A stretch of 64,000 nucleotides of DNA, taken from the NCBI GenBank assembly GCA_964252035.1, contig OZ176201.1; one strand, given 5' to 3'. The notes beneath the pieces were generated by a model. The model ran no database searches, was not told the DNA's origin, and saw only the letters and a program-made list of their open reading frames with translations. A program made the translations under genes and the position numbers. The DNA is from Podarcis erhardii (Eukaryota). Below, one piece after another: positions 16,538 to 56,275 of the stretch (position 1 is its first letter; the number at the start of each line of letters is the position of its first letter).

Positions 16538-16852
16538 ATGGAATCTGAAGATTCAATTTCTCCTGAAAAATTAGTTGAGGGTTTGAAACTCTCAGAGGAA
16601 CAAAGCAATCCTTCACAGCCAGATTGTAATAATGTGCATGTCCCCAAAATCGCCAAAGAAGGAGTGAGTCAGCTGCCTCACTCTGAGTCCAGAGAAGACG
16701 AAGACCTCTTCCATGACTGTAATGACTCTTTTGAAGCAGGAGTTGCAGAAGAGAATCACAATAATAAGGCAGATCCTTTAGAAAATGAAATCGAGCTAGA
16801 TGAAAAGGACTTATTAGAACTAGAGAAAAATATGTCTGAGGAAGAAAAACAG
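16538..16852 (+). CDS. TTC1: TTC1 coding exon 1 (acidic N-terminus, 105 aa; exon starts ~16511)
   Basis: Acceptor ttgttgaag|gcag; ATG in AACATGG context; MESEDSISPEKL...FHDCNDSFE...LLELEKNMSEEEKQ matches the TTC1 N-terminus; donor CAG|GTATGC. Confidence 0.93.
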
Positions 16853-18696
16853 GTATGCTTTAATGAAACTACAAATGTTTCTTTAACATTGTGTTGATTA
16901 GCACTCTGATTTTAATGATATTTCTTTGGAAGTATGTCCCATTGATTTAAGTGCAACAAAGTTCCAAGGAGTATGTTTTGAATTTTAGCTTTTCTAGTAT
17001 TCACCGTATGTTTTAAAAAATGAAATCTTTCAACATAGTCCTGCTCTTTTTTTAATTGGAAATAGCATTTGTTGATTTCAGTCAAATTTACTCCCACCTA
17101 CAGCAGCCAATTCCTGTTCATCCTTTTTTGGAAGTAAATCCTTTTCAGCTTAGTGGGGCTTATTGGCAAGTGTGCAATGAAATCATTGTGCATGCAGAAC
17201 TACTTAAATGAATCCATTGTGCTCTTGGAAGTCATTCCATGCACACAATGGATTGCAGTTGGATTGCAATCTTTTCAGGGCACAGGTTCTCTCCCCCCCC
17301 CCCCCCCGTTTCATGCTTGAGGTTTGGAGGGTTTGTGATTAAATTCCAGCACTGTGACTCTCCACACCCACAGCTTGTGTCATTTGTCAAGATAAAGGAA
17401 TCCACAGAGACATTTCTTGTTTTCCTATATGTCAGCCTTCCCCAACCTGATGCCTTCCAGATATTTTGGACTACTACTCCCATCAGCCCTAGCCATCACA
17501 GCACCTAGTTAGGGAATGTTGCTATATGTGATTGCAAGCAGACTCATTATTTGCTCATTTTTGTCTGCGTTATCCATATTTGTCAGAGACACCAACTTTT
17601 CCCTTACCACTCCTTTGTTGTGTTTCTGTTTGTCTTCTGATTGTTCTGTTCCACTTGCTCTCTGTCATCTTAAAACAGAAATGTGCAGTGTGTGCCTGCT
17701 GGACAATTGTGTGCAGGCTGTACTTTTAAAAAAATTCTTGTGTTAGACTCTTCTAGATTTTTAAGTGTCGTTTGACTTATCTGAGTTGTCTGATTCATTT
17801 CAGGATTTAGAAAAGGCAACTGTTAAAAGTTTAAAAAGCTGTGCTTGTTGGTGGTGGGTGAGATTATTGCTAATGTCAGAACTGCTAGAAGACACATATG
17901 ATCTTGCTTGTTTGTGACATGATTGTCTGGATTTGGGCTTTTCACCTTTGCAAGCAATGCTTATTCAGTAGCAAGAATATTCATCTAAAATAAAAGTTAA
18001 TCTTTTAATTATTTTGTTATGTTTATCATTCAACAAAAGCAACAGTGGTTTTGTCAATCAGTTTATGTGCAATGAACAAAGGGTAGGTTGGGGAATTCTA
18101 AGACTGGATAACTAAGGTTAATAAAGGGATTAAAAAGCATTCCTCAAGCAAGGCTGCTTTTTAGGGTTCAGACACAGTCATTTCTCCTTTTATATCAAGA
18201 AAGATGTGCAACAGTGACTCAGCAGTATATAAACAACGAGGCCTCTGTTTGCATTTAAAAACAAAATCAGATTCTTCACTGGGTAACATACAACTCGTGT
18301 CTAGTAAAGCTAGACTCTCTATTATATTAAAATTGTGTAAATATTTACTTTGCAGAGTTATCTTTCTGCTAGTCATTAGATGAGCAAGGTTGCTTGTACT
18401 TACACGCTTACTGCTGGACTGTTTGCTCCATGTACTGTATCTTTTTAGCTTTCAGCCATGGTTAATGACAGAAAAATATTATCAAGGAAGTGCATTCCTG
18501 TTCAAATGTATGTTTCCTAACCTGTAGTATTTTCCCTTACATTCAAATTTTTATTTCCCATCAATTACCAGCAAAACCACAAAACTAAATTTTATTTTCA
18601 TCGAATGAATGCTTACTAAAATTTGGAGGTGTATGGCTGGGTAGTAGAAAATGTTGTTGGCCCTGATTTCTCTAAAAGAGAAAGGAAATCATTAAT

Positions 18697-27465: not shown

Positions 27466-27602
27466 GCAAACTGAAAGATCTTGGCAACTTGGTTCTGCGC
27501 CCTTTTGGCCTATCAACAGAGAACTTCCAGGTGAAACAGGATTCCTCAACTGGCTCGTACTCTATCAACTTTGTTCAAAATCCAAATAACAACAACCGAT
27601 AA
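27466..27602 (+). CDS. TTC1: TTC1 final coding exon
   Basis: ttgcag|GC; (G)[44 protein letters not shown], the conserved TTC1 C-terminus. All exon phases join, giving an 867-nt CDS. Confidence 0.97.
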
Positions 27603-28017
27603 CATAAGCCCAACCCACTCCTGGTAAAAAGTGTGGCATTGGAATTGTGGCGTTTCATTGAATGCAGAAAGAGGGTGAATTAAAACTTTTAAGGCCTAAC
27701 ATCTTTATCTAAATATGAAGATTTGAACATAGTCTCATGCATTTCTCTTCTATAAGGTACTTTTTACAGGTGTGGGTGAATAGAGTGAAGTGGTCTGACT
27801 TCCGCTGCCATCTTAGATGCACTTTATTTGGGCACTCTTTATCCTCCCTTGTGATGAAGGGGGAGGAGTCTTTGGCTTTGCTAAATAGAAGAATCCAGTG
27901 TTCCCATACCTGTAACTAAAGTACAACCATTTTGTGTGTTCATGGAGTTTGCAGCCTGTGTGCGTGAATGAGAGGGCTGATCCCTTTTTATTCAGAGAGG
28001 ACACTTTTGCTAAGTGT

Positions 28018-28840: not shown

Positions 28841-28904
28841 TGTAATCACACATAGGATTGCAGTGTTAGCTGTTTATCAACCTGCAATCCTATGTGTGAT
28901 TACA
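28841..28904. repeat. Perfect 23-bp inverted repeat with an 18-nt loop
   Basis: TGTAATCACACATAGGATTGCAG (28841-28863) is the exact reverse complement of 28882-28904. Confidence 0.95.
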
Positions 28905-29051
28905 CAGAAGGCATAGTTATGTCCAGGTATGTCTAGGATTGCAGCTTGAGTATATTAATTAGCCTTTTACTGTCAAATAAGCAACCAGAGGAAGAGGCAG
29001 AAACCGACTGCTTGTTTATCTTTTTTAAAAGTGCAGGAAAAAAATCAAGGC

Positions 29052-29057
29052 TTTATT
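29052..29057 (-). terminator. PWWP2A: Probable polyadenylation signal of the short PWWP2A isoform
   Basis: - strand AATAAA with TGTA upstream and a T-rich tract downstream, 2.3 kb after the AQRH stop. Other - strand AATAAA hexamers lie in between. Confidence 0.5.
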
Positions 29058-31365
29058 GAATAGATGGTACACAACATTCTTGAACAGTTAATTTCAAGTG
29101 ACCCTTAAAAGTTGAATCGTTTTTCCTCATTCAAGTCTACCAAATGAAGGAGGCGTAGTGACATAGCAAACAGACAAAAAAGGTAACATGGAGCAAAGCT
29201 TAAATATTAAGCAACTAAAGCAAAAGGGTGAAAAGCAATACATTACTTCTACAACTACAATTTTTCCCTGACAGTCATTTCAAAGTGAAAAACAAGGTGG
29301 CTGTAGTTTCTCAATTCTTCATGAGTAAGTACCAACTAGCCATTTTGTCCATTTTCCAACCTGGCTGTCTTTATTTTGCCCATAAACCTGTAGTTCTACC
29401 ACTTCGTACAGTGTTATGGATGTAAATGGGCAGCGGTTGTGCTCTTGAAGGAGAAGGAATAGGAGCACAGGCTAAAAGTAAGATGTCTCTGCAGGCACTA
29501 CTGGCTCCACCCATCATCAATCCAGATATGTACCCTTATTTGTACAGCCAACACCATTTTCCTGAGTCAAAACTATCATTTTGTGCCATGGTTACCTCCT
29601 AAGGTATGTGCACCTTCTCCAGTGAAGTCACCCAACCCTGCTTTTAAATAAAAAGGATGCTTATTTTTGTCTAACTACACTGCACTGACTCGCTGCAGTA
29701 CCTTTTTACCTTGCCCAAATAAGCTTCTAATCTTGCTGGAAAATTGTAGAGTATACTTTATTTCTCTTTTGCTTTGACTATTGTAGAAAGACTACTGCAA
29801 AGCAATTTCTTGTTGTCCTTTAAACATCCTCTCTAATTTCTTAAGAAAACTGGTACAGTTGAACCTCTTAAAAAGGTGCTATGAACTGTTTTTATAAATA
29901 AAAATTTAAATGTTTTCACAGACATTTTTAGTAAATATTTAATATAGAATTGCATTGTAATATACTAACTCATACATCTTTCCCATGTTTAGAATGCTAT
30001 TTAAAAATATAAATCTGTCAAAGCCAAGGGAAAATCTTGTATAATTACAACATGCATGGAAATTATGAAGCCAAGACTTCAGCTTGTATTTGCTGGTATG
30101 GGTAACTTTGGAAAAGAGAGATATTTTGTTAATTTGTAGATGGTTACCTTAATGCCATACAAGACTTAACTCTTGTGTAGATGGCATTGTCATAGTTTAA
30201 AAAGAACTTGATATTTGTACTTCATCAGATTGTGCATTCATTTTGACTTGTGTTTATTAACCCATCAACCTTCCTGGGGAATCCTGATCTGCTGTTAATA
30301 AACTAAATGCAAGTTAAGGTTTTATACCTGGGTAATATGAAAAGCAGATTTTAATAGTGAGTGCAATCCTGTGGAAAACTAGGTTGAATTCCATTGAAAT
30401 GTGGAACAATCTGGCAGTTAAATACTCAAGTCCTGCAGATAAGAGTTAAGACTTGTTTTATTGGAGAGGGCTTGTAAACCAACTAACTTTAGAAATGCTA
30501 AAACCCCAATCTAACAGCGGGCTGTTATGAATAAGTTAGTCACAACCAAGTCAGGACTAATTTAATGTGCAATATGTTCCTTCATTAGAAAGGAAACATG
30601 ACTTTGGATACCAGTTACTACCCTATCTTAGCTGTAGCTGTCCTTTAGGGTGACTACTGCTAGAGAATCACAAGCACACAGACATTTGTGTATTGTCAGT
30701 GATTCCTGCATTTTATAGAATGATCTTCGTGGCCATCAAAGAAACATTTCCCACAACAGCAAAGATTTGCCATAATTATTCAAGAATTACATGGAGTTCA
30801 CTGTCGCTGCCCTTACCACCATCTCTAGGGGAAACCTTTGCCTCCAAACAGGACTGTCAGTACTTAACACCACAGCTGAATGTGGACGTGCTTCCAGAAA
30901 TAGGTTACAGCTCTGCTAACACCTGCACCAAATACTAAAGTTTGTTAAGATGTGAAATAACACACAGTAAGAACAAAAGTAAATGTTCAGAAGTTTACAG
31001 CCAACTTTCCAGAGGTCTTGACTCCACTGCTAGGGCCTATTCAGACTATCACATTTGAAGAGTAAGAGTACACTTTGTGATTCTTCATACTAGTAATTCA
31101 AGTGGTTCCTTGCAAGTTCATCTTGAACAGGCTCCTTGGCTCATGCCTTAGTTATTGCAAAAAAAGTTTATAAAATATTTCTAACACTTCAAATTCCAAA
31201 ATAAATTTACAGTAAGTACAGATGCCCTGGAAAAGGGGTGTGGTGGTTTTTGTAAAAAGTTCTCTCCCAGTATACACTGCAATCTAGATTTCAGTTGTAT
31301 ATCATGCCTGGCCAGCTGACCTTCTTCATGGCAGTGTAGGGAGGTTCCATAAATACAGCAGGCGA

Positions 31366-31379
31366 TTAATGTCTCTGTG
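31366..31379 (-). CDS. PWWP2A: PWWP2A alternative terminal exon, coding part (A-Q-R-H-stop)
   Basis: Branch-like CTAAC, then TTTTCCCTCTCCTTTTCAG|CA CAG AGA CAT TAA; phase-compatible with the internal donor at 41903. I recall human short isoforms ending AQRH. Confidence 0.8.
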
Positions 31380-32699
31380 CTGAAAAGGAGAGGGAAAACA
31401 TTCTGAGTTAGCAGTGAATGCATAATTGCCCTTAAAAGACTTTAGAACAGTTAATATGTGGGTTTTTTTTTTTTAATCAGACATAATTTTTAATGGGGAA
31501 AATAAATAGTTGAGGAGAAAGTCTTAGCAAGCCCATACAGATAAATGTGATGGTTAACACGCAGCAAGCCCGAAACAGTATATCAATTATTTTCAACATC
31601 ATCCTTCCAAGAACCTTGTAATGTTGGTTACTATTATCCCTATAATGCATACTAGGGTCTGCCTTATCCAAGACCACCTTGTGAATTCATGGCACATCTG
31701 ACTTCCTCATGTATACACAACAGTCTCTTAACCATATGCTACACCAGCTGATGTTTGTCAGGTTTATTACTGCCACAGTTTAAAAGTATACCCAAATGCT
31801 GCCTACTCCAACTCTCTCTACCTAAAGGCCACAAGTAGTGAGTAGAGCTAACATCTTCAAATGACACAAGCAGGAGGTAGGGGAAAGGAAGACAAAGGGT
31901 TGCATTCATTCATCTCAGTGGGTGTTCTCTGCATAGGACTCGTGTCTATCGAGTTCAGTGGGTCTACTGTACATATAGCTTAGCTTTAGCTGGATACAAC
32001 TCAATGACTTGAAAATACAGTGCTTTTGGAGAATTTTGCTCCAGGCAGGGCAGAGGACAAAATGCTGGTGGGGTGGACAAGGATAGAAGCTAACATTAAA
32101 TGGACAGCAGCATTTGCTTACTCAGCAGAGGCCTCTTCTACTAACCCATCTCTATGGGAAGGATCAGACGTTAGCACAAGACAGGTAAGCACAATCATGT
32201 TATATAGGGACACCCCCAACCAATCATTTCTAACAGCAGAGAAAGCAGGGCTAGGGCAACACGGATGGGAGAAAATGTTGGCCACTGCCCATGAACCAAA
32301 CTGGGTTGGGTCCCATGGGGAGCTTGTGTGATGGAAAGGCATTTCCATTTCCCCTGTATTTGAGACTTGCACTTTCTGTTACATGCACATACTCTCCATC
32401 TCCCATCCTTCTATCACTCAGGAACAGATTTTTGAGGATTTGTGGAGAAAGGAGCTGGGAAGCTCTGCTGCTTGAGCAGAACTCCCATTTGTGAGTCTTG
32501 GGACCAAATCCAGTATTCCCAGTATCAAACTGCTCAAATGAAGAGCTCAGAAAAGAGGAAAGCTACTGCAGACCACAAACGTGCTAGGAAAACACCATCT
32601 CTAACAGACTTACATTTTTAATTACTTGCGCCAGAAACTGCTTGGAATGTTTCCATGTTGTCCCTATAACACTATCGCTCCTGAGGTGTCCCCTTCTAA

Positions 32700-32876
32700 G
32701 TCTTGGAACAGGGCTATTAGTAGCCCTTCGCTCTTTTAAAATGTGTTGGGACGGGTTATTGGGTTGTTGTTTTCATTTTGATAATGTATTTTGTGGTTTT
32801 ATATTCTGATTTTGTTCTGTGAACCACCCTTAGATCTGCAAGTATATGATGGTATAATAATAATAATAATAATAAT
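32700..32876 (+). mobile_element. L2-like LINE 3' end with (ATA)n tail
   Basis: T-rich 3' UTR, ttctgtgaaccaccct motif, then (taa)n tail. Confidence 0.6.
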
Positions 32877-35007
32877 TCTAGAAAAACCACGGAGACCTGT
32901 GCCTTGGACTTGTGCAACATAAAGAGAAGATTCCCATAACACGCTGCATTCAGTGAGCCACAGCTAATGAGCTACCAAGCTACAACACCACTATCAGCCA
33001 AGGAAGGGTGGGCTGGAAACAAACAACTGAAAGGCAGGTTCCTGAGAATCTTATCTTGGGGGGGACAATGGGCATGAGCACTCCATGCAGGGAACTGTCA
33101 AGAGCAAAGACAGTATATTCTAGGGATCCTTCAGCAGCTGTTATCACTGCATGCATGCCACCACCATGCTGCTCAATGTGGGAAAAACAACTATGTTTAC
33201 TTTGCTCCCCATTAGCCACAGACTCAAGGACTCCTATACTTTTTATGCACTCTGTCTTGCCCCCTGCAAAAGGAGGTCAGGCTCAGGGATCAGGTGTGGA
33301 ACCAAGAGTAGAGCTCCGAATGACATGAAGTATCACAAATTCAGGCAGAGGTTCTTCGTACCTTCTGGAAGCACCACAGCTCCAAGGGACTGAAGCCATG
33401 AAAATGAGGAAAACCTAGGCTGCAAACACAGAGGGTGTTAGAAGACCAGCCCATAAGACAATATACCTAAGAATCCAGCAAGATACCCTCCACAGCAAAT
33501 AGTGGTGAAATGACAGGATGCTGATGAGCAATGAGTAGATGGCTCGGGGCCTCCAATCACAATTTTTAGTACCCACCTTTGGGGTTTCTTGTACTGATAC
33601 TATCTACCATTCGATTCATGGATACCAACACCATCTTTTAAGGAGCTCAGTTGTGACTGACTGAAAGGAATCCCATTTGACAGTTTAAATTTCCCAGCCT
33701 CAAACTATAGTTCACCCATGAAGCTCCCAAACTGGGAATATTTTCAAAAGGCAGCAGGAGCTAAAACTTTCTTGTTCTTGTGTATGTTTAACAGCATACA
33801 GGTCTACTCATAAGTATATTCCACTGAATTCAATGGGGCTTGTTCTGAGGAAAGTGGGTACAGGACTGCTGCCTTAGTTTAAGAAGTTACACGGAACATA
33901 TTTATAATCCTGTCAGCAAACTTCCCTTACAAGAAACAAATGTACAACCAATTACTCACTTCCCCTACTTGGGATTTTCTTGTTCACGATACAAAACAGA
34001 CCCACGGATATCCAAAAAGCAACAGGAAAACATCAAGAATATCAGCTAACAGTCCTTTGGTAAGAAACAGAGCTAACATGATCCAACTCAGTGACTGGAT
34101 CTTTAGACATTTTTATTTGGCGAAAAGTAACAAGAAAGATGTCAGAAGATCCAGTTCGTGAAGATAGAAAAAACATAGCTTAATTATAATGCCTGGCACA
34201 GCCCAGCAAATGCTAGTCACAACTAAATCTTACTGAAATCTTTGTGGCATTAACTGTAATTAATTGTTTTCCATAGGATTGTTCCATAGGATTGTTTTCT
34301 GTGCAACATATTTCTGCTGAATTATACCCATTATCCAATAAGTGACAGCTGTTTCAGCAGATCAAGGGCAAGTGAGAATGGTTTCTCTTGAACAGCAGCT
34401 CCCTGTCATCCCATGTTGCATGGCCAAACAGCATTTCAACTTACCTTTCAGAGCAATTTAATATGGCATGGGAAGCTACTGTCGAACAATGAAAGCTGAA
34501 AATCCCACTGGGCATGTGCTCTTGAAAATCCTACCAGGTAGCTCTTTGAATCCTAGCAATTTATTGACCACTTATTTCACCATTTGTTTATCACTTCCTC
34601 TAATAGCCAACTCATGTGATGAGTGCTGACAGAGCTGCAGCCAAAACAGAACCACTGACAAATGAGGAGGTATTGATTGACGTGCTTGAGGGAAATGCCA
34701 AGGTTTCCAAAAGTACAGAAAATCTTTTAAACGCACACATGGTGTAAAAACAAACAACATAATGAGGTTTGAGCATGCTCAGTAGCCAAGGAATGTTAAG
34801 TGTCAGCTGGAAAAGAAAAATGGAAAACTAGAGGAAGGGTGTGGACATGTGGGAATTAATAAAAGAATCCACAGGCCAAAAGCATATCAAAGTCACCAAA
34901 ACTTGAGTTCCATAACGAAAAGGGAAGGATGAACCAAATGGAATCCATTAGGTTTGTAATTATCTGATAATACAAAGTTGATGGGTTTGAGAAAATAAGC
35001 TGCAGAA

Positions 35008-35132
35008 CAGAGATGGGGAACCTGTGGCCCTCCAACGGTTGTGGTCCTCTCAACTCACATCAGCTCTGGTCAGCATAACCTATGGTCAATGGGAGTCCTG
35101 CAGCACTGGGAAGGCTATGTTTCCTATCCCTG
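35008..35132. mobile_element. Degraded palindromic hAT MITE
   Basis: CAGAGATGGGGAAC...TTTCCTATCCCTG termini; flanks CTGCAGAA/CTGCAAAG. Confidence 0.7.
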
Positions 35133-36018
35133 CTGCAAAGTGAGGCTAGCTTTCACCCTGCATAGCTAGCTATACATTGAGGATGCCTAGAAGGACACGC
35201 AGGCAACATACTTACAACTACTTTCTTATAAACGTTTGTATTGAAAGCAGCTATGAAAATATATGTAAATCTCTGGTGCTTTCTTCTTTTGAACAGTGGT
35301 TTTTATCTATTTTTTGAAAATACATTTTAAAGTATTTTTAATACTTTTATTAATTTCTTTTAAAGCTACAAATTTAAATCTTAAAATATATTTATTACAA
35401 TTGCTTTCCATGTTACTCTTTTCACTGCTGTACACAATACCCTTGATTATAAAAGGAAACGTTTTTCAAGCACCATGAAACTTGAAAACCAAAAATCACA
35501 TAGGGAAAAGATATTTGATTTTAATTTTTCTAACTAGTGTTGCAAGTCTAGTCCTCATTATTGTTCGATTTGACGGACATTGTCTTTTTCATCATCTCTG
35601 TAATCTCCACGTATAAAGTTATAAACTGAAACCAAGCAAAATGGATGTTTTCATATTATACAGTGCCTGCTTTGCAATTCAGTAAATGTATCACCTGAAG
35701 AGTCTTTGTGAGCAAATAAGCCATATCAATTCTGATACGGTAATATTTAACTACACTGAATAAAAGCTGAGGTATGAACCAGCCCATGAAATCAATATGC
35801 AAGACGTGAACACTAGCGAAATATACTATCAGCATCTATCTTTGGAATTTGCTTACCATGGACTAGTGGTGGATGGGATGTATGGGCAGAGAATGATGTA
35901 TTCTTCAAGACCCCTGAGGGATGCAGTGCTCTGTGCAACAAACACACATTTCAACCTCCTGCAGGATCCCTCTATGTGCTGGACAGAGCACCCAGTCTCA
36001 AGGATGGAGATTAGGGGG

Positions 36019-36447
36019 AAGTTTGTAGGTGACATCAAACTGGGAGGAGTAGCCAGTGCCACTGATGACAGAATTGGGATTCAAGATGACCTAAACAGAT
36101 TGCAGAGCTGAGCCAAAGCTAATAAAATGAATTTCAATAGGGACAAATGTAAGGTTCTACACTTAGGCTAGAAGAACCACCTGAACAAATAGAAGATGGG
36201 GAATACCTGGATTGCCAGTAGTACATGTAGAAAAGGATCTAGGGATCTTAGTAGTGCATAAGATGCAAAAGAAAGAAAGAAGCTTATGCTATTGTAGGCT
36301 GTCACCAGGAGTGAAGTGTACCAATCAGGGAAGTTATAGTGCCACCCTATTCTGCCTTGGCCAGACCAGACCATACCTGGAGTACTGTGTCCAGTTCTGG
36401 GCACCACAATTTAAGGATATTGACAAGCTGAAAAGTGTGCAGGAGGG
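36019..36447 (+). mobile_element. Decayed CR1 LINE ORF2 (reverse transcriptase C-terminal) fragment
   Basis: Translates across stops and frameshifts to KFVGDIKLGG (cf. KFADDTKLGG), IQDDLNRL, MNFNRDKCKVLHLG, EKDLG, RPYLEYCVQFWAP. Confidence 0.88.
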
Positions 36448-37209
36448 CCAAGGACCCTTCTGGTACAAGAGAGGAAGAGTCCTGTTGTGAGGTTAGATTC
36501 TGCCCTAAGTCACCAGTGGAGGAACATGTGTGAATTCAGCTCAAACAGCTGCAGCAACCCTTCCTGTGCTACATACGGTAAATATTTTTTGCCTAGTGAC
36601 TTCTTGCCCACCTGCCTGTAGCCTAGCCTTCCTCAACCTGCTACCTCCCCCCCAAGATGTTTTGGACTACAACTCCCATTAGCCCCAGCCAGCACAGCCA
36701 AGGCTTATGTAGATTATTTTGCAATGCAGAACATTCTTTTCACTGCCTTATGAGCTTGGAAGTAGCAAAGATTTCTCACTTCCTTGAAACTATGATATAT
36801 CATTTAAAGTACTGCCCATCTCTCTCAAATACATGCACCTGGCTCATTACCATACTGCAGGGGGACTTGTCTCAGAACAGAGTAACGCATACTAGAAGGA
36901 TGATAAAACAACATGCTACTTGATCCTTGTTAAAATGTTTCTGTGGGCAGATTCACTGGATGCAGTCCACTGGGGCATGTACCTATGTTCCATGTATGCA
37001 TCTCATTTTAACTGTTCATTTCCTGTGCTGGTCATTTCCTGTGCTGGTCATGCAGAAAGAATCATTTACTTAGACCTTAGCACATGCTACTAATAGTGCT
37101 AGATCTGAATAGTGCTAAGATGTGCTGCAGCAACACAATACAACATAGATAAGACTGAAAAAGGTGTCAGCAATTAAGACTAACATTTCATTATAGCAAA
37201 AGCCTTTGT

Positions 37210-37303
37210 GAACTTGGAACTTTTGCCCAGGAAAGCTTTTGACATAATGCATTTGTAGCACCTTCAAGACTGCTGTTTTTGCAACGACAGACTAACACTG
37301 CAC
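37210..37303. mobile_element. Possible Penelope-like remnant
   Basis: aaagcttttgacataat...caagactgctgttttt...cagactaacac resembles squamate Penelope-like ends; resemblance only. Confidence 0.4.
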
Positions 37304-37698
37304 TTATTAAAAATTACAAGTGGCAAGTCCTATCTTAAAGAGGCATTTCCTTTTATGCAAGAAAGAGGGTCATGGCTATTCTAAGACTACTCTTGCTACA
37401 AAGAATGCATTTTCTAAAGCAAAATTATCACGACAGCCATTCTGAAATCCTAACTGCAGTTCAACACAGGTTGGTGTATTTGATTATCATGGAAATGAGA
37501 GCACACAACTTGTGCAGGGCTATAACAATGGAAACAGATTAGGTAGAACATGTTAGTAAGGCATGACGGTTTACTAGCTTTTTATTTGGAATTGTTCTGC
37601 TTGTGGAAATAAGTCATCTGTTCTTTCACCAATTTCATTCCACGTCAGGATAAAATTTATACCATCGTTTTCCTTTGAGGTATGAAGCATTGAAAGTA

Positions 37699-37749
37699 AT
37701 GCCCTGAGACCCCCGGGTATAGGGGGGTATATTATTATTATTATTATTA
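37699..37749 (+). mobile_element. Very short L2-like 3' terminus with (TTA)n
   Basis: ccctgagacccccgggtataggggggtata followed by (tta)n. Confidence 0.55.
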
Positions 37750-40055
37750 ACCAACAGGGATGTATTCAACTAAATTATTGTGCTTACCTAATTTCCCGTA
37801 CCTCCCTAGGACTACTCCTGTGCATCTACCAAATTTGCTCTGGAGTTCCCCTCAACCCTTCAGAGACCATCTGGAGGGGAGAGTTTTGTTATGCTTGCAG
37901 AAGTTCTGTGCATGCAATTGTTTAATTGGATGCAATTCATGATGATTTTAAATGAAGTATTCTGTTTAGTTTTAAGGCAACTCAGGGTTAGCTACATGCA
38001 CCAGGGCATTCTCCGTGTCTTTCACTGAAGAGACAGCTGGTTGAAGTGGAATAATAAACTACTTGAAAGAAAATATACGAAACCTAGGTGTTTGGTGAAA
38101 ACCTTTGCCTAAAGTTTGACAATCAATTTGTGTATTCTGTCCAAAATTCAACAGCTTGGATACAAACATCCTGCTCACGTAGGCTGGGTGTGTCACCAAT
38201 TTCCATCAAACCCTCATCATCCACCCCTCACCTTCCCCCAAAAAACCTATACCGGTGGGTTCAGTAATCCCAAGTCATTTATTTTGGAGAAGGACACAGG
38301 AAAGTGCAGATGGATGAGTCAGCAAATGCACCCCCACAGCACTAGAAGTGCTTCCTGCTCAGGCAGAAGGCCCTGGAATCTAAGCCAATATTTGCTTTGT
38401 AGTTTAGTGCCTCTTGAACAGCCGCTTTTGCCTCCAAGCCTGGATACAACATCCAAAATCTCTTGAATGCCTTGCAGCAAATGGATTATATCATGACATC
38501 TCCATGCTTTGAACTGAAAAATCAAACTGCAGTAAGGCTCTACACAGAAATGAACGACATTAAGTCATTGCCTGTGACATCAAAATGTCACTAAGGAACT
38601 CCAAAATTAAAGAGATAAAAAAAAATCAAACAAGTATTTTCAAAAGGGAAGCAAAGAGAAGATTTCTCATCAAGGCAAGCAGAGAAAAGTAGTAATTAAA
38701 TTTAAAGTGAGAGTAATTTCTACTCAACCCTTTTAATGTCATGTATAGCATGCCCGATTGCAAACTATGGCCTGAGTAGGGAACAGAACTGTTCCACAGT
38801 GTTGTAAAAAGCATGATTTTGAAGACAAGACTCAATTATATTTATTTCAAACTGGAGCAAAGGCTCCAGAATCAAATTATACTCTTGGTAGAATGCAAAT
38901 GCAGAAGACTGTCTATTCAAAATGGCAAAACCCTAGAAGACGTGCCCAATCAAGCACTCATCACAGGCTCCCTTGAAGGTAGGGTCATGAATTAGGAAAT
39001 TAGCAGGTACACCCAGGTATACCTATCAATCTCATAATGTGTACACTAGCCCCAAACTGAGCTTTTAACTTTGCAGAAAGCACTGAAAGTTGTCTGTTTC
39101 ATTGCGAATTTTTGTTTTTAAAAACCTTAGGCACAGCCTGCCTGAAAAAAACAAAACAAAATAGTTCAACACTGCATTTGTTTCTGTTTGCAGGAAAGAG
39201 AATACTGTACACAGCACAGGAGTGAAACAGAATTGCATGCTATTAATGTTGTGTGTTTTGTAATTTCAAAAAGCATTGACAGACTGAATGCAGGTTTATT
39301 TGTCTACACGTTTAGAAATTTATGCTTATCTAGTGTTACATCAAGGAAGGATGAAAACTATTTGGAGCCGATTTCAAGCCCACGTACAAAGCGTCAGAGA
39401 TACCAGATTTAAAGTAAAATGTTTGGGAATAAAATGAAGTTTGAGTATTATGATAAAGTATACCTTAGAATCAAACTGTCACAACAGAGCCTTTGGTCAT
39501 TAATTCTTTGAGATTTGATACACACAATTAATTTAGCTTCAAGCTTTTTCCCTTTTTCCTAAATGCCTACTCCTAAAATTGTAATGTGTTTTGGGGGAGA
39601 ATGAAATTAGGCACCTTTTACAACATTGCAAACTTAAACCAAGTACAAATTATATGAGTCCATTAGAAAGTGTAATGTCTAAGCGAATCAACTGCATAAA
39701 AGGGTCCAATGCAGAGCATCAGACCTGCAGAAGATCTAGGAGCAAATGGACATGAGGGATAAAGTAACATAAAATGGTGGGGGGAATAATTACACTGGAA
39801 AGGCGTGTGGTTTTTTAAAGCACTGACAAGGATTTGCTATGGGGAAATAAATAGCTGAATAATTTGCCAAAATTAGAACCTTATTTATATTTTCAACACC
39901 AATGTTATTTTGATACGCAGTTAGTGATACTAATTTAAGAGTGTCGAGCAAGAAAATTATTTCCTAAATATTGTGTAAACAGAAAACAGTCCTGTTTCCT
40001 GATTTTATTTCAAAGCTTTTTGAGAAATACACACAAATAATTAGATTTAGTCAAT

Positions 40056-40061
40056 TTTATT
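40056..40061 (-). terminator. PWWP2A: Probable polyadenylation signal of the long PWWP2A isoform
   Basis: - strand ...TGTACAAAAAAACTGTAAATAAAATTG..., ~1.1 kb after the stop. Confidence 0.7.
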
Positions 40062-41184
40062 TACAGTTTTTTTGTACATTTCAGAGCATTACACAATTAC
40101 ATTTTCCATATTTTCTGACCTGCAAACAGATACCTTAAATGGAAATAGTTTAAAAAAAATATGCTGCTCGGTACATCCAAATGCAATAATTACACATCTG
40201 ACAGTTCACAAAGTGTAATTTACTAGGACGCATCCTAAGAATTTAAGAACAAGTAGTCAGGGGGGAGAAATCTGACCAATTATCTATACAACACAAACTC
40301 TCTCAAGCTACACCTTCAAGACAATTGTCCTAGGAGCATCCCACCCCACCCTCCTTGGAAATTATGATTCACACCTATGCAGCATTAACAGCCTCTGATC
40401 CCAAATGCTGGGGTACTATCCAGACCCGCCTGTGAGCAACTGGCTTCCTCTTAACTTGCCAAAACCTGAAGTTCATGCTGCTGTCCCTGGGTGCATAGCA
40501 TAACTAAGCATTTGGGAAAAGGTGACCAACAAGACCTATCTAACAAATGATAAAACCTTTCTAACTGAATTCAGATTAAAATTGGTTTCTAAAAGGATTT
40601 AAAGTGGCCAGTGAGAAAGTGTTTTTAGGCAAAGGCTGAACTCTTTGGGCCCATCACACTATTGTAAATTACGTTTTCTGGGCAGGGGACAGGGAAGGGG
40701 AAACACTGAAATCAAGTTTGAGGCTCAGAGAGGGCCTAGGGTTCTGCATTTAAGGTGGACCATACAAGTCATGTTTAAAACTTCCATTTCATTTGTTCCC
40801 TCCCCCCTCCCCCTACATACACTGAAATGGTATATATAGTGGGTAGAAACTAGTAAAAATTCCCTGCAAATAAACTGCTCTTCAGCTGAGGTTATGGCTC
40901 CTGTGCATGGGGTGGTCAGAGGAATTTTTTACTTTTACCAAAAAAATGTAAGAGTCCTCTTGAAAAATACTGAGATCTCGCTTTAGGTTAATTTGATTGC
41001 ATGTACAATTTGTTAAGTATAACTTTCAGTCAAGACATTGCTACAAATGGACATTTCAGTATATAAAAAAAGCAGCCAACTGAGTGCAATTTTTGTGTTT
41101 AATTGGCTAAGTCCTTCATAGCATTTAACTAGGCTAGACATTTCAAGGAGCCTCCACATTTCTTGCCTACCTTACTTCTCATGT

Positions 41185-42868
41185 TCATGTTTCAAACTGT
41201 GTCAGCAGGGCCCGAACTTCAGGAGTTAGCTGCTTAGCAGCCTTGGCTGCTTCTGTAATGGCCTTGCGGTAAAGACCTTTTCTCTTCTTATTAAATCGCG
41301 ACTGAAAGTTTTCTAAAAAAGGGGAGAGCTGTGAAAGAGCAAGGAAAGATGTTGTTGGGGACCCAAACCATGAAATACGAGCTTCCTGTCGGACTAAGAG
41401 GCCGTTATCTTTTCGGCTCACAGTTATAGAAAGAATACGGGCTGGCCACCATGGGAAACCATATATCTTGGCCCAAACAATGTCTCCTACACATATGGTC
41501 CTGCCATCTGGTGTGACACATTTANNNNNNNNNNNNNNNNNNNNNNNNNNNNNNNNNNNNNNNNNNNNNNNNNNNNNNNNNNNNNNNNNNNNNNNNNNNN
41601 NNNNNNNNNNNNNNNNNNNNNNNNNNNNNNNNNNNNNNNNNNNNNNNNNNNNNNNNNNNNNNNNAGAGTTGGTGGACTTCAAGTCATCTGTGCTATCACT
41701 ACTACACACTGATGCACTGGAAGAGTCAGATTTCTTTTTATTAAGGGTCATGTAAACCGTTATATTGCTTTTGCTGCCTCTCTTGCCCAGTGTCTGCTGT
41801 TCATCCTGATCAACAGGTACATGCACTTCATTTGTGTCCTGAACCTCACTGCTGGCCTCTTCAGGGCCTTCTGAGGGGCTCTGATTTTCTGAAGGGGCCT
41901 CACCTGCTGAGCGGGTAGAGGAGCAGCGAGACTGAGGCTTAGCTGCCATCTTGCCACTCTGCAATTTCTCAAGCCCTGTCTTGAGAGAGGAGTCGTTTTC
42001 TTCATTTCGGTACCTTTGTGGCTTTAGACGCAATCGTGGGGGCAGGGAACCTGAGCTGGTGTTTTGAAGACGCCGTGTGAAGTGGACCTTTGAATGTGCA
42101 TTTTTGGAAGTAGAGGTTGCACTCTGTTTCTTTTGTGCCTTCTCTTTGGCTATTTTCAAAACTTCCCGAGCTTTTGCATGATCCATGTTTTTGCTCTGGA
42201 GAACTTTTTTAGTATTTAACTGCGTTTTTGAAGTATTTGCTTGAGTGGTAACTTTGACTACTCTACTTCTGCTATGAGCAATATTTGCAACTTTGACCAC
42301 GGAATTCCTTTTCTGGCTTTCATTTTGGCTTTTCCCATCAACTTTATGATCAGTTTTAATTTTTTTATTCACAGTAGTTACGCTCTCATGTCTTCGCTTT
42401 CTATTATCCTCATACCTTGAGGAATCACTTGTACTGCTGCCCTTCTTAATTTCTTTCTTTTCTGCAACAATACTGTTCTTACACTTGTCACACAAGACCT
42501 GTCTGGGTCGTAGTTTGATAGCATTCATAATAGAAGTGGGTTCCTCCCTGTACATTTTCCGCTTGGGCCGTTTAATTTTCCGAGGCGGCGGCTGAGGTAT
42601 TGACTGGTTATATGTGTCCCTGATAAACAAAGGAGGAGGATATGGTGCTCCCTCGTGAAAAAGGGGAGGTGGCTTGGAAGTCCATAGGCTTTTAGCCAGG
42701 CTAGGCTCTGATGGCTGGAGGGGAGAAGAGTCTGTGACTACCCCATTGGCTTCACACTTCACTTGGGTCTCATCTTGGAATGATTTACTTTGGAGCTCCA
42801 TCGCTTCAGGATTATCCTTGTACTCCCTTTTGGGAAATATGGTCACAGGGATTCCGTGCGGTCCAAAC
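41185..42868 (-). CDS. PWWP2A: PWWP2A exon 2 (long isoform) including the C-terminal PWWP domain
   Basis: Acceptor TTTTTCTCTCTCATTAAG|G; FGPHGIPVT...LFIRDTYNQSIPQPPPRKIKRPKRK...CDKC...; PWWP signature ICVGDIVWAKIYGFPWWPARIL; ends LLTQFET*. Confidence 0.97.
41525..41664. other. 140-nt run of N (assembly gap or masked sequence) inside PWWP2A exon 2
   Basis: Seen directly; the reading frame is preserved across it (47 codons). Confidence 0.99.
41898..41906 (-). promoter_or_regulatory. PWWP2A: Internal alternative 5' splice site in PWWP2A exon 2
   Basis: CAG|GTGAGG after ...RSA, phase 1; a strong U1 match embedded in coding sequence. Confidence 0.8.
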
Positions 42869-45800
42869 CTTAATGAGAGAGAAAAACACAGAGTTAACTG
42901 CAAATCTTTGCTTAATTGAGATTTCTCAGTATCTTAAGGAGCTAACATTTCACACCACATGAAAACAAGCTTATCATTTCAGAATACACAATGACGTGAA
43001 TTGGAAAATTTCAGCACTGACTAGAAAGCAATCTACCAAGGGTCACAAGAATTGTGTGCCAGCAGCAAAATGGTTTATTTCCCTTTCATTGCTGTTCTCA
43101 AGACACATTTAGAATCTCCTCTATGGCAGTGCAGTGGTTTCAAGACTTTGTCCACAGTGACCCACCTGCCATGGAATTCCTAAAACATTCTGGAGGCAAA
43201 TACTCAGTTGGCAGAGGATACTTCATAAGCTTGTTGGGCTTTATTATAGTCATGTAAGCTGAGAGTGCACTGGAAATGGGCAGGCTCTTGTGCCTCCTAT
43301 TACCCCTCCTTCTCTTGAGGAACCCCATGTTTCTCCAGAAATGTTCTAGAAACAAATGGTTTAGGGAAGCTAATCTTGTAGAAGGTACAGTGCGTGCCTG
43401 GCTATCGGAAGGTAGAGAACTGCAATCGCCTAGCTGTTCTGGTTTTAGGGGAGCTTGGTGCCAAGGTTTCCTGAATGGCAACCACGAATCTCTCCCTGGC
43501 AACCGTCTTCCTAATTCCAGCATGACACGTTAACCCTCCTTCTCCTGGAGCTCTCTGCACAGAGAACTTGGAAGGGCCTCGCCATTTGAGAAGAGACCAA
43601 GCATACCCACCCATCACCTGACATGTACAGAGGAGGAGTCAGTCTCCCAGGCCAAGTCAGAAGGTATGAGAAAGACTCAGCTGCATCTGAACAAGGCTTT
43701 GTGCAAATTGAAAGGCCCGTTGCCTTCTCCTCTGCAAAATTTTCTGCTGTGCCAGATGGCCGAGGTGACCAAAAAGAGTGCGCAGCTAGCCAAATTGTGC
43801 AGACCACCCTTCATCTGTGCATGTCCCCATAATTTTTAGACTGGGCTAATCTTATAAGTATTGGCTAGCTCCAACTAGTCAGGGAAATCAAGACCTTATA
43901 TGAACAGGTCACCTTTAGAACTTTCAAATCCTCCCAGCTAGCTAGCTAGCTCAGGTGCAGAGACAGACATCTTAATCACAGCCAATTCTGTTAACTGTAT
44001 CGCTGAAGATACATGTGATGTGATTAACAGTCAATGCAGTCCTTGGCTAGCATTTCCTATTTAAACAGTCTGAAGAGGTAATCTATCAATTTCAAAGTGA
44101 GAGGGCCTTATTGCTTAGAGTTGGCAATCTTACACAAAAAAGGCTGAAGGCTTTTTTGTACACATTCAGCAGCAAGCATTTCAGCATAAGTAAGTGCTGT
44201 CCATGATGCCCTGCATCATAGGCCTTGCATCGTTCAGCATGGCTGCGACTAGGTGAAAGCAAGGGCTCAAATGGGTGGCATATTACCTGCTTCTACAGCC
44301 TTACCCCACTATATATTACAAACATAAGTCTAAGTGTGGGACCAGGCTGCTCAATTCAAAAAGCTTGGATTCACACTGTTGTCATTCCTCCTGCCTGTTA
44401 AAGAGTAACTTTATGCCACATATAAAGGTGTTTTTCTACACAGACATCAGTTATGTATAAGAAATGGAACATACACCAAATCATTCCTCCTCCCCAATCC
44501 CTTCCACTTCATTAAACAGACTTTAAACTTCTGCCTGAAGGTGCCCATGGATCAGGGTAAACTGTATGCTTCTACTGCTGGGGGTAAGGAAAGGAAAAAG
44601 TCCACCAGATCCACCCCGCCCCCGCATTTTTCTGGCTACCCTCAACTATAAGACATGGGGTGTGGGTCGGTGTTGTTTTGCAAATAAAATGAACGTAGGC
44701 TGATCTATTTTTCTTAATCTGTACAGTAAGTCCTTAGAATTAAACAAAGATGAGGATCACATTATTAAGGATGAGTAGGCAAGCTTATTTACTCCCTACT
44801 TAGGCATACAATCGTGGGCATGAATGAATGAAATACCTAAAGGATGGCTGTATACTTAGCAGCACCTCTTGCTTCACCAAGAATCTACAGAAACATGTTA
44901 TTGTTCTACAGTGAGCCAGCTTGTTCCATTCTAGCTTGCACGGACCTCCCAATAACTTCATTATGCATAATGTGAATTATTGTAAAGTCCTGGGGTTTCA
45001 GATTCTGGAGCTTTCTAACTGCACAATAGAGATCAAGACACCTTCCAGTTCCTGAGCTCCACACAACTTGCACAGCTTTCCCTTTTAAACTCCCTATTCA
45101 GTAGGGGATTTTGTTGCAATTTTGCAAAATTTTAGGCAGCCTGGTTATGGCTACTTAAAAGTATTTAGCACAGCTTTGCCTCCTGGCAAATGTCTCTACT
45201 GACACTGTTCGTGGACTCTTGCTTCCAATACTCCCCAGTTCCTGATTTTAACAACTCCAAAAGACTATCAAAGTTTATACCTACTATCAAATCCTTAGCC
45301 CAAAGCACCATAAACCAGGCCCTACTTTTATCTTTTTTTATTATAAAAAGTATACTTCCTTCAACAATAAGACACTGTTCTGCTGACAGAGAGTATCTCA
45401 AAACTAATCTTTAGAAATTACACCAAAAACTCTGGGAACAATCCAGACAAAGTTCTGCACATCAAGTCCCAATGATTCAAAGGAAAGATATGCAGGTATG
45501 TGCTTACCACTCCCACTGAAGGGAACCAGACTTAGTAGTGCTTCATTTTGCCTAGCTTGTGCCTTCTAAAATCAGAAATTCAGCAGCCTTCCAAGATTAG
45601 AAATTCAGATTTCTAGATGGCATACCCCACCAATTTAATATTTACCAGCAACTTATTTCCCATATCCCTAATAGTCTTAAATTCACTTTGCAAATTTAAT
45701 CATGTTTTTCATAAATCAGACTGAACTATAATCACATTTGCCAACAATTAAGTACTGACTCAGACTTCACATATAAACAATGCTCATCCAGTAAATATGA

Positions 45801-54372: not shown

Positions 54373-55583
54373 ATTCTAGAGTTTCTGTTTTAAGGTAAGG
54401 ACATGCATTTGAATGGGCAAAGCTAGATTTGGAACCAAGTTAAAGTCCCAGTTCAGCAGGTCAGCCCACAGAATACCCTGGCCAGGCCACACCCAAATAT
54501 TATCCTCTCACAGAAGTAGAATAGGAAGAATTACAACCCCCCCCCCTTTGTATGCTGAGGTTTACTTAGGTTTACTTTTAGCACATTCTCTACAAGCAAG
54601 TACACCATCTATAGGCTAGACATTCATTTCCCCTGTCCTAATTCACCCTCAGGAAAGCCATAATGAAGATGTGTCTAGAAATTCACTCCAAGATTGTAAA
54701 CTATGATACAACCTCTACATAAAGTCTGTTCGACATGGCCTCTCTCTATGCCCAGAAGGAAAATCAATACACAGTATGTAGTGGGAAAAAGTGTGCCTTT
54801 TAACTTATGAATAGGGTGACTATTTTAAAGCCTGGGACCATGAAACATTTAGCCAATTCTCACTGTGACTTCCCAATATGTGAAGCTGTAGCAACATACA
54901 ACCTTGTCACACAACTTTTTTCCAGCATGAAGGCTGACTGCTTCTGAAGTTAGAAGAATAAGGTGAAGGTGAATTCAAATATCTTAAGTAACTGGAAAAC
55001 AAATATGAGCCCCAAGCCATTATGGATAGGACCATATTGTCTTGAAATTTTCATAATACAGCACTGTATAAATAAAATCACTGCATATTTATGCATCAGT
55101 AGCAAACTAGTAGGAACTATGGTCCAACTTTTTGCTACCAAGAAGGAGAAGTCTCCCCAATTTTTGATCCCTGTCCAGACGGGTCAGCCTGTTCCCCTCC
55201 CAACCCACCTTCTAAACTTCGTGAGGAATCAAAATTGGGGGGGGGGGTTACCTAAATAAAGGCAAAGAATATTGTAGTGGTAGGCTACAGATCACGTTGG
55301 AATTCGAGGGCGAGGGAAAACCTCTTCCCTGCTTGCATGGATCAGAGGCAGGAAGGCAGAGCTCTGAAGCACACCACGAGGCCCTTTGCAACAGGGCACT
55401 TTCGCCCTCTTGGCGGAGCCATAAAACCAAACACCTCGTGGCTCACCCACCTCCTCATCTAACGCAGCCACCCCCCAGATGCCGAGAGGGCACCACCTCC
55501 AGAAAGAAAGTTGGGAGGAGAGACTGAGAAGGGCGGCGGAGGGTGGGTCTCCCTCCTGTAAAACACCGGACAGCCTCTCTCAC

Positions 55584-55700
55584 CTCTTGGAAAGATCCAT
55601 GAGGACCCCGGAAAAAAGCTTCTTCCCGAATCGGAAAGACACCACCAGCGCGTCCTCGATGATGTGATCCAGGGTGACCAGCACCTCCGAGCCGGGCAGC

Positions 55701-55732
<32 letters not shown>

Positions 55733-56275
55733 TTCCTCCTCCTCTCCTCCAGCGGCCGCCGCCTGCTCCGCGGGCGCAGCGAGCTCCGGCTGCTTCGCAA
55801 CGGCCGCGGCGGCAGCATCCGGCTCCTCCTCCTCCGGCCGGGGCGGTTCCTCTCCGGGCTCCGGCCCCGCGGGGCCCCCAGCTGCAGGCGGCGGCGGCGG
55901 CGGCGACAGCGGCAAGCAGGGCGGCTGCTCCCCTCCGCCTTGTCCCTCCGCCTCCTCGCCGGGGGGGAGCTCGGAGAGCTCCGCGGTGAGCGGGCAGGGC
56001 GGCTGAGGCGACCCTCCGACGGGCTCCGGGCTGGGCTGGGCCTGCGGCAGGTCTCGGGTCCCCGCTGGGCTCCCGGGCGGCGGCGGCGGCGGCTCCTCGG
56101 CCTCTCCCCCCGGGGCTGGCTCGGGCTCCTCCCGGGCGTCGAGCACCGCCGACTCCACGGCGGCCTGAGTGCCAGCCGGGAGCGGGTCTGCGCCGGCCTC
56201 GCTGCCCGGGATGGGCTCGGCCTCGCCGGCTCCACCATCACCCGGCACCGCCGCAGTCGCAGCCACGGCCGCCAT
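55584..56275 (-). CDS. PWWP2A: PWWP2A exon 1 (Ala/Pro/Glu-rich N-terminus)
   Basis: AAAATGG start; MAAVAATAAVPGDGGAGEAEP...PGSEVLVTLDHIIEDALVVSFRFGKKLFSGVLMDLSKR; donor AG|GTGAGA, phase 2, joins exon 2 in frame. Confidence 0.96.
55706..55732 (-). repeat. Pure (GCG)9 coding repeat (poly-Ala9)
   Basis: Nine consecutive CGC triplets on + with no synonymous interruption. Confidence 0.95.

What the first reader, a model, noticed from the sequence alone, without database searches (positions are those of the whole stretch)
31366..41906. PWWP2A reader-domain switch: internal donor plus a distal A-Q-R-H terminal exon removes the PWWP domain
Exon 2 contains a strong donor (CAG|GTGAGG, 41903) ~130 codons before the PWWP domain. 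10.5 kb downstream is a textbook acceptor (CTAAC branch, 16-nt pyrimidine tract, CAG at 31380) whose in-phase reading is A-Q-R-H-stop. The product is ~556 aa. It keeps the proline-rich N-terminus and the internal region, reported in human to engage MTA1/HDAC-NuRD and H2A.Z nucleosomes. It loses the PWWP domain (an H3K36me3/DNA reader) and gains a different ~2.3-kb 3' UTR running toward TTC1. I recall human short isoforms ending in AQRH. If correct, this 4-residue exon and the switch are conserved across amniotes, which argues for function.
Basis: partly seen in the sequence, partly recalled or inferred. Interest (0 to 1): 0.7.

Follow-up and report, generated by a model that had tools for sequence, protein, structure and literature searches.

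The report
Known PWWP2A short isoform, lizard copy
The splice switch that removes the PWWP chromatin-reading domain from PWWP2A is really encoded in this wall-lizard sequence and is conserved across amniotes, but it is already annotated in many species and was already tested in mouse cells, so it is ordinary.

Summary
On the minus strand, PWWP2A exon 2 has an internal donor CAG|GTGAGG (GT at 41903-41902). It is the best consensus match in that exon. At 31381-31380 there is a CTAAC branch site, a 16-nt pyrimidine tract and a CAG acceptor. Joining the two reads G|CA CAG AGA CAT TAA, i.e. A-Q-R-H-stop, and gives a 556-aa product without the PWWP domain.

The 140-N run (41525-41664) lies inside the intron of this short form, so it cannot affect the junction. 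As written it keeps the long form in frame.

42 of 148 database PWWP2A proteins end in ...STR(S/T)AAQRH. They come from squamates (including Podarcis muralis and P. raffonei isoform X2), turtles, birds, placentals and marsupials. The same exon is present in snake, turtle and quail DNA. Its only coding differences there are synonymous, and sequence identity jumps at the acceptor.

It is not new. Zhang et al. 2018 described long and PWWP-less short PWWP2A isoforms made by alternative splicing and polyadenylation. They showed that the short form still binds MTA1/HDAC1 but loses gene-body binding. Mouse has separate RefSeq transcripts for both forms.

The parts
55584..56275 (-). PWWP2A coding exon 1, from the ATG at 56275 to the donor AG|GTGAGA. 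It is proline- and alanine-rich and shared by both isoforms.
   Evidence: ORF and sequence. The joined product has no internal stop.
41904..42868 (-). Proximal part of exon 2, shared by both isoforms. The acceptor AG is at 42870-42869. It encodes FGPHGIPV...STRSA.
   Evidence: It is 100% identical over 321 aa to Podarcis lilfordi PWWP2A.
41898..41906 (-). Internal 5' splice site CAG|GTGAGG (GT at 41903-41902, phase 1).
   Evidence: It is the best consensus match in exon 2. The sequence CGCTCAGCAG|GTGAGGCCCC is identical in P. raffonei, snake, turtle and quail. Database isoforms with a dozen or more different alternative tails all diverge exactly after ...STRSA.
41185..41903 (-). Long-isoform-only coding part of exon 2: the serine-rich stretch, the PWWP domain and the stop after TQFET. 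It is removed as intron in the short isoform.
41525..41664 (.). Run of 140 N inside the long-isoform-only part. It was not filled.
   Evidence: The frame is kept as written. The spacing in the P. raffonei locus is also 140 nt.
41236..41487 (-). PWWP domain (Pfam PF00855).
   Evidence: E = 1.3e-14, 54.9 bits, profile positions 1-92 of 93.
39115..41184 (-). Proximal 3' UTR of the long isoform (extent approximate). AATAAA signals lie at 40061, 40009 and 39300.
   Evidence: Conserved against snake to about 39115, turtle to about 39168 and quail to about 39997. Signals. The ends are inferred, not shown.
31380..41903 (-). 10,524-nt intron of the short isoform.
   Evidence: The annotated coding range in P. 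raffonei spans it.
31380..31411 (-). 3' splice site: CTAAC branch site (A at about 31408), 16-nt pyrimidine tract and CAG.
   Evidence: The TTTTCAG| motif is conserved in all five loci.
31366..31379 (-). Coding start of the distal terminal exon: (G)CA CAG AGA CAT TAA = A-Q-R-H-stop.
   Evidence: The annotated coding range of P. raffonei PWWP2A ends exactly on this TAA. Snake, turtle and quail differ at three positions only, all synonymous or stop-keeping.
29030..31365 (-). Distal 3' UTR of the short isoform, about 2.3 kb. The 3' end is inferred from the AATAAA at 29057-29052.
   Evidence: Conserved blocks against snake, turtle and quail run from 31377 to about 30550 and from 29626 to about 29024-28955, then stop. 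Signal. Places 29187-29224 lie in here and were left out of all searches.
27468..27602 (+). Last coding exon of the convergent neighbour TTC1 (...[44 protein letters not shown]-stop).
   Evidence: In the P. raffonei locus the neighbouring gene is on the opposite strand and carries TPR repeats.

Best explanation
This is the lizard orthologue of the known PWWP2A long/short isoform switch, and it works through a composite exon.

Exon 2 can behave in two ways. If its internal 5' splice site (41904|41903) is not used, the transcript runs on through the serine-rich and PWWP coding sequence. It reaches the TQFET stop and is cleaved at polyadenylation sites about 1-2 kb later. This gives the long, H3K36me3-reading protein.

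If the internal site is used, 10.5 kb is spliced out. That piece includes the PWWP coding part, its stop and its 3' UTR. Exon 2 is then joined to a distal terminal exon (31379 to about 29030). That exon adds only A-Q-R-H and a different, deeply conserved 3' UTR of about 2.3 kb.

The 556-aa product keeps the proline-rich MTA1/HDAC-binding region and most of the internal nucleosome/H2A.Z-binding region. It has no PWWP reader. By analogy with mouse, it should still assemble the MTA1-HDAC complex but not be drawn to H3K36me3 gene bodies.

Shown here: the sites, the frame, orthology and conservation. Inferred: use of the junction in this species, the poly(A) sites, and the protein's behaviour.
For: - Sites and frame.
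- The PWWP domain lies only downstream of the donor.
- 42 of 148 retrieved PWWP2A proteins end in AQRH (39 straight after ...STR(S/T)A, 3 after extra exons). They come from squamates, turtles, birds, placentals (mouse, goat, bats, mink, otter, squirrel, colugo, gibbon) and marsupials.
- Podarcis muralis X2, P. raffonei X2, Zootoca X2 and Lacerta agilis X2 have the same end. They differ from the window's conceptual product only in exon-1 low-complexity runs and a few substitutions.
- The P. raffonei annotated coding range ends on the orthologous TAA.
- The exon is present in snake, turtle and quail DNA. Its three coding differences are all synonymous or stop-keeping.
- Identity to the window rises from 31-47% in the last 100 nt of intron to 57-74% in the exon.
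- Conservation ends just past the AATAAA at 29057.
- PMC6143588 states that PWWP2A and PWWP2B make long isoforms and PWWP-less short isoforms by alternative splicing and polyadenylation. It reports that the short form co-precipitates MTA1 and HDAC1 and loses gene-body ChIP signal.
Against: - There are no junction-spanning reads for this species.
- The congeneric isoforms are automatic gene models whose transcript support I could not inspect.
- The 3' end at about 29030 rests on a hexamer and a conservation boundary only.
- I could not confirm that the short isoform cloned by Zhang et al. is precisely the AQRH form rather than another short form. A mouse entry does end in AQRH.
- A conserved AATAAA 223 nt into the distal exon reads AATAAC in this window, so poly(A) site choice here may differ from relatives.
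Confidence: 0.9

Rival explanations
1. The sites are conserved relics. In this lizard the junction is rarely or never used, so the short form is noise, or a gene-model artefact carried over by homology-based annotation.
For: No reads could be laid for this species. Four other acceptor-like sites of similar motif quality lie in the same interval. The proximal AATAAA of the distal exon is AATAAC here.
Against: The donor, acceptor, four codons and stop are all intact. The only cross-species coding changes are synonymous. The UTR is conserved from lizard to bird. The isoform is modelled independently in four lacertid genomes. Fourteen small runs of a related organism (71-148 million letters, possibly RNA) hold 54-60% of the words of 28900-31400. 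That share is what about 1.5% divergence over the full stretch would give, and it would not be expected from such shallow whole-genome DNA. This last point is only suggestive.
Confidence: 0.06
2. The conserved block at 31379-29030 is conserved mainly because it serves the convergent neighbour TTC1, as an extended 3' UTR or antisense element, and not as a PWWP2A exon.
For: TTC1 ends tail-to-tail only 3.7 kb away, with its stop at 27600-27602. In the green turtle record the TTC1 coding range overlaps the PWWP2A range, and the AQRH exon lies inside it.
Against: Identity jumps exactly at the minus-strand acceptor. The 14 coding nucleotides change only synonymously in the PWWP2A frame. Plus-strand TTC1 poly(A) signals lie at 27679, 28018 and 28685, short of the block. 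42 database proteins use the exon as PWWP2A coding sequence.
Confidence: 0.03

Closest known systems
Mouse PWWP2A short isoform (Zhang et al. 2018, Nat Commun, PMC6143588; mouse transcripts NM_027557 and NM_001164231 as listed in PMC11672872)
   Same: It has the same gene and the same architecture: an alternative 5' donor inside the large exon creates a new short CDS end and a new 3' UTR. It shows the same loss of the PWWP domain. A mouse entry has the same ...STRSAAQRH end.
   Different: Only the species differs. In the lizard the isoform is inferred from sequence, conservation and congeneric gene models, not from transcripts or protein assays. The intron is 10.5 kb here, and I did not measure mammalian distances.
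Isoform X2 gene models of Podarcis muralis, P. raffonei, Zootoca vivipara and Lacerta agilis (NCBI)
   Same: They use the same junction and the same AQRH end. They are 548-552 aa, against 556 aa for the window's conceptual product. The differences lie mostly in exon-1 Pro/Ala runs. The P. raffonei coding range ends on the orthologous TAA.
   Different: The window comes from another Podarcis-like genome. It is 97-99.5% identical to P. raffonei in DNA. Its exon 1 differs from the P. lilfordi, P. muralis and P. raffonei proteins.
PWWP2B short isoforms
   Same: The paralogue is reported to make PWWP-less short forms in the same way.
   Different: It is a different gene. I did not test whether the donor is homologous.
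Composite-exon switches in which splicing competes with polyadenylation, such as the immunoglobulin mu secreted/membrane switch (textbook knowledge, not tested here)
   Same: An internal 5' splice site inside an exon competes with a downstream poly(A) site. Using the site replaces the C-terminus and the 3' UTR.
   Different: This is a resemblance of mechanism only. Here the fully spliced form is the truncated one, and it loses a chromatin-reader domain rather than gaining a membrane anchor.

Membership tests
PWWP2A orthologue | C-terminal PWWP domain after a long region with no assigned domain | tested here: met
   PF00855, E = 1.3e-14, on 41188-41523. There is no Pfam match in the upstream 413 aa or in exon 1.
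PWWP2A orthologue | Close sequence identity to named PWWP2A proteins | tested here: met
   100% identity over 321 aa to Podarcis lilfordi, and 90-96% to other sauropsid PWWP2A proteins.
PWWP2A orthologue | Conserved neighbourhood: tail-to-tail with TTC1 | tested here: met
   The TTC1 C-terminal exon is at 27468-27602 on the plus strand. A TPR-repeat neighbour lies on the opposite strand in the P. raffonei and turtle loci.
AQRH-type PWWP2A short isoform | Internal donor in phase 1 directly after the ...STRSA codons | tested here: met
   The donor sequence is identical in four other sauropsid loci.
AQRH-type PWWP2A short isoform | Distal acceptor whose in-phase reading is A-Q-R-H-stop, at the orthologous place | tested here: met
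   The P. raffonei coding range ends on the aligned TAA.
AQRH-type PWWP2A short isoform | The junction is used in transcripts of this species | not testable with these tools
There is only indirect support from run word shares and congeneric gene models.
AQRH-type PWWP2A short isoform | The product binds MTA1/HDAC1 and loses H3K36me3 gene-body localisation | not testable with these tools
   Shown for mouse in PMC6143588. For the lizard it is inferred from 88-90% identity of mammalian short forms over the last 50 residues. I did not compare the MTA1/HDAC1-binding region between lizard and mammals.

The most novel reading that the evidence does not exclude
Seen from the gene's full extent, the 'canonical' PWWP-bearing protein is the product of polyadenylation inside an intron, and the AQRH form is the fully spliced mRNA. 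The ratio of reader-bearing to reader-less PWWP2A would then be set by competition between the internal donor and the proximal poly(A) sites. Each form would carry its own deeply conserved 3' UTR. The distal UTR ends within about 0.3-1.4 kb of the TTC1 3' end, so convergent transcription could couple the two genes. In this lizard the conserved proximal AATAAA of the distal exon is lost (AATAAC), which might shift 3'-end choice. None of this regulation is described in the papers I read.
Probability: 0.25. Interest if true: 0.3.

Novelty: already known. Interest (0 to 1): 0.12.

Why it matters
PWWP2A links an MTA1-HDAC deacetylase module to chromatin through H2A.Z and H3K36me3. A switch that removes the H3K36me3 reader changes where that deacetylase goes. 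This is biologically meaningful, but the isoforms, their binding partners and their ChIP profiles are already published for mouse. The AQRH end is also already in public annotation for dozens of amniotes, including this lizard's congeners.

This check adds three small things:
- The four-codon exon and its 3' UTR are under visible constraint from lizard to bird at the DNA level.
- The same internal donor feeds a dozen or more different alternative tails across sauropsids.
- The N run does not affect the junction.

Tried and rejected
I kept 29150-29260 out of local comparisons and started the Rfam scan at 29261.
- Fetching loci by short-isoform proteins (chicken, mouse, gopher tortoise) found nothing, because only the longest product of a gene is on record. 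I used long isoforms instead. No mammalian locus was fetched, so mammalian evidence is at the protein level only.
- tblastn of the other alternative tails seen in birds, turtles and snakes (GLNKWQHFTSD and others) against the window gave only chance-level matches in the part of the output that was printed; the output was cut at 6000 characters and showed only two of the tails. This search therefore showed no sign of those cassette exons in this lizard, but it does not rule them out.
- An Rfam scan of 29261-43000 found nothing.
- Earlier scan notes near this place: none.
- Motif quality as evidence: rejected, because five acceptor-like sites occur in the interval.
- I did not look at human sequence or contigs.
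- I did not test amphibians or fish, and I left the third protein word search unused.
Full report
**What is in the sequence.** The gene runs on the minus strand.
- One search shows ...ACC CGC TCA GCA G|GTGAGGCCCC. The last exon base is 41904 and GT is at 41903-41902.
- One search shows ...cactgCTAACtcagaatgttttccctctccttttcag|CACAGAGACATTAATCGCC. AG is at 31381-31380 and the first exon base is 31379.
- The donor leaves one base of a codon, so the joined reading is G|CA CAG AGA CAT TAA = Ala-Gln-Arg-His-stop.
- Joining exon 1 (56275-55584), the shared part of exon 2 (42868-41904) and 31379-31366 gives 1671 nt. That is 556 residues and one terminal stop, ending ...KPQSRCSSTRSAAQRH.
- The donor is the best consensus match in exon 2, at 8 of 9 positions.
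- The acceptor is one of five comparably good sites in the 12 kb, against about 0.6 in shuffles. Motif quality alone would not single it out.

**The N run, tested first.**
- The only N run is 41525-41664, 140 letters.
- It lies downstream of the internal donor, inside what is intron for the short form. It therefore has no bearing on the claimed junction.
- For the long form, 140 N is 46 codons plus two bases. As written, the reading frame continues from ...DDLKSTNS through the run into KCVTPDGRTICVGDIVWAKIYGFPWWPARI... and on to TQFET-stop.
- Pfam finds a full PWWP domain in that frame (PF00855, E = 1.3e-14).
- The flanks align colinearly to the Podarcis raffonei locus with exactly 140 nt between them. 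The P. lilfordi protein is within one residue of the written length.
- I used only spacings. I did not read or fill the letters.

**Identity of the locus.**
- The shared part of exon 2 is 100% identical over 321 residues to Podarcis lilfordi PWWP2A, and 90-96% identical to other sauropsid PWWP2A proteins.
- Exon 1 differs from the P. lilfordi, P. muralis and P. raffonei proteins in proline/alanine runs and a few substitutions.
- The DNA is 97-99.5% identical to P. raffonei. The window is therefore from a close relative within or near Podarcis.
- As in the related loci, the long isoform is encoded by two coding exons, and the second carries the PWWP domain and the stop.
- TTC1 lies tail-to-tail. 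Its last coding exon ends with a stop at 27600-27602 on the plus strand.

**Is the AQRH exon real and conserved?**
- Two word searches returned 148 PWWP2A proteins, and 42 of them end in AQRH (39 directly as ...STR(S/T)AAQRH, 3 after extra exons). These include:
  - squamates (Pogona, Rhineura, Candoia, Sceloporus, Hemicordylus, Elgaria, Eublepharis, Gekko, Thamnophis, Crotalus);
  - turtles (Dermochelys, Gopherus);
  - many birds;
  - placentals (mouse, goat, two bats, mink, sea otter, ground squirrel, colugo, gibbon);
  - marsupials (bilby, wombat).
- The cluster holding the Podarcis protein also contains isoform X2 of P. muralis, P. raffonei, Zootoca vivipara and Lacerta agilis, all ending in AQRH.
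- In the P. raffonei record the annotated coding range starts at the orthologue of 56275 and ends exactly on the TAA that aligns to 31368-31366.
- The same exon is present in a snake, a turtle and a quail locus fetched through their long isoforms.
  - The lizards read CA CAG AGA CAT TAA.
  - The snake reads CT CAG AGA CAT TAA.
  - Turtle and quail read CT CAG AGA CAC TAG.
  - All three variable positions are synonymous or keep the stop.
- Identity to the window is 31-47% in the last 100 nt of intron and 57-74% over the next 486 nt of exon.
- Conserved blocks continue to about 30550, resume at 29626, and stop at 29024-28955 in all three distant species. That is just past the AATAAA at 29057.
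The 3' end is inferred, not observed.
- The donor sequence CGCTCAGCAG|GTGAGGCCCC is identical in all five loci, including the synonymous positions of the Gly and Glu codons that form GTGAG.
- Across sauropsid gene models the same donor feeds a dozen or more different other tails. It behaves as a general exit point from exon 2.

**What is already known.**
- Zhang et al. [quoted passage not shown]
- They also report that:
  - residues 148-373 are necessary and sufficient for MTA1/HDAC1 binding;
  - the short isoform still co-precipitates MTA1 and HDAC1 but not CHD4 or MBD3;
  - in ChIP-seq the short isoform, like a PWWP deletion, loses gene-body (H3K36me3) localisation;
- Link et al. [quoted passage not shown] They map H3K36me3 binding to the serine-rich stretch together with the PWWP domain. 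Both of those parts lie downstream of the donor here.
- One caveat remains. I could not see the figure that defines the cloned mouse short form, so its exact C-terminus is not confirmed from the paper. A mouse database entry does end in AQRH.

**Mechanism.**
- Exon 2 is a composite exon. Its internal 5' splice site competes with the proximal poly(A) sites that follow the TQFET stop. AATAAA signals lie at 40061, 40009 and 39300, and the proximal UTR is conserved to about 39100.
- Cleavage there yields the long reader-bearing form.
- Splicing from 41904 to 31379 removes the serine-rich and PWWP coding sequence, its stop and its UTR. It adds four residues and a different conserved UTR.
- The new stop lies in the last exon, so nonsense-mediated decay is not expected (established rule; an inference here).
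- The architecture resembles the immunoglobulin mu secreted/membrane choice (textbook knowledge).
- Shown here: the sites, the frame, orthology and constraint.
- Inferred: use of the junction in this species, the poly(A) sites, and the protein's behaviour.

**What could not be done.**
There is therefore no junction evidence for this animal.
- One indirect hint exists. Fourteen small runs of a related organism (71-148 million letters, kind only guessed as RNA) hold 54-60% of the sampled words of 28900-31400.
  - That share is what full cover at about 1.5% divergence would give.
  - Shallow whole-genome DNA would not give it.
  - It shows neither strand nor splicing.
- No mammalian, amphibian or fish locus was examined at the DNA level.
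- No human sequence was fetched or compared.

**Verdict.** The feature is a conserved, functional-looking alternative last exon. It is already annotated in this genus and already characterised in mouse, so novelty is nil and interest is low.

Noticed in passing
window 31151-31156 (minus strand): An AATAAA 223 nt into the distal exon sits in a block (TTTTTGCAATAAA) that is conserved in P. raffonei, snake, turtle and quail. In this window it reads AATAAC. If relatives use it as a proximal poly(A) site, this genome may have lost it.
   Followed up: partly
window 41525-41664: The N run is exactly as long (140 nt) as the spacing between the same flanks in the P. raffonei assembly. That looks more like deliberate masking of known-length sequence than an assembly gap of estimated size.
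   Followed up: partly
I left it alone.
   Followed up: no
proteins P0026, P0065, P0103, P0120, P0028, P0014 and others: The same internal donor is joined in gene models of birds, turtles, crocodilians and snakes to a dozen or more different other tails. Examples are GLNK-stop, GLNKWQHFTSD-stop, a 44-residue read-through of extra exons that still ends in AQRH, and ELMQWRH... in elapid snakes. In the part of the tblastn output that was printed (two of the tails), only chance-level matches to this window appeared.
   Followed up: partly
P0157 (Podarcis muralis isoform X3); window 36167, 33419, 33281 (minus strand): A second lacertid short form ends ...STRSAA-stop. Three AG|CCT(AA/AG/GA) sites in the window's intron would give that reading. 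Which one, if any, is used is unknown.
   Followed up: partly
L003 (Chelonia mydas) 33849-44184: In the green turtle record the TTC1 coding range overlaps the PWWP2A range, so the AQRH exon (40171) lies inside TTC1 on the other strand. In the lizard the two stop codons are 3.7 kb apart with no coding overlap.
   Followed up: no
window 7236-7841 (minus strand): A 201-aa ORF looks like the C-terminal part of a CR1/L2-type LINE reverse transcriptase (...HWLPVRFRAQFKVLVLTFKALNGFGPVYLKECL...). This identification is by eye only.
   Followed up: no
window 55580-56352, both strands: PWWP2A exon 1 is very GC-rich, with Ala, Pro, Glu and Arg runs. It gives long overlapping ORFs in several frames. The length differences between Podarcis species all fall in these runs.
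   Followed up: partly
window 16325-16897 (plus strand) and 15158-15526: An ORF containing ...MESEDSISPEKLVEGLKLSEEQSNPSQPD... looks like an early TTC1 coding exon, preceded by a GC-rich, promoter-like stretch. Pfam found nothing in it.
   Followed up: no
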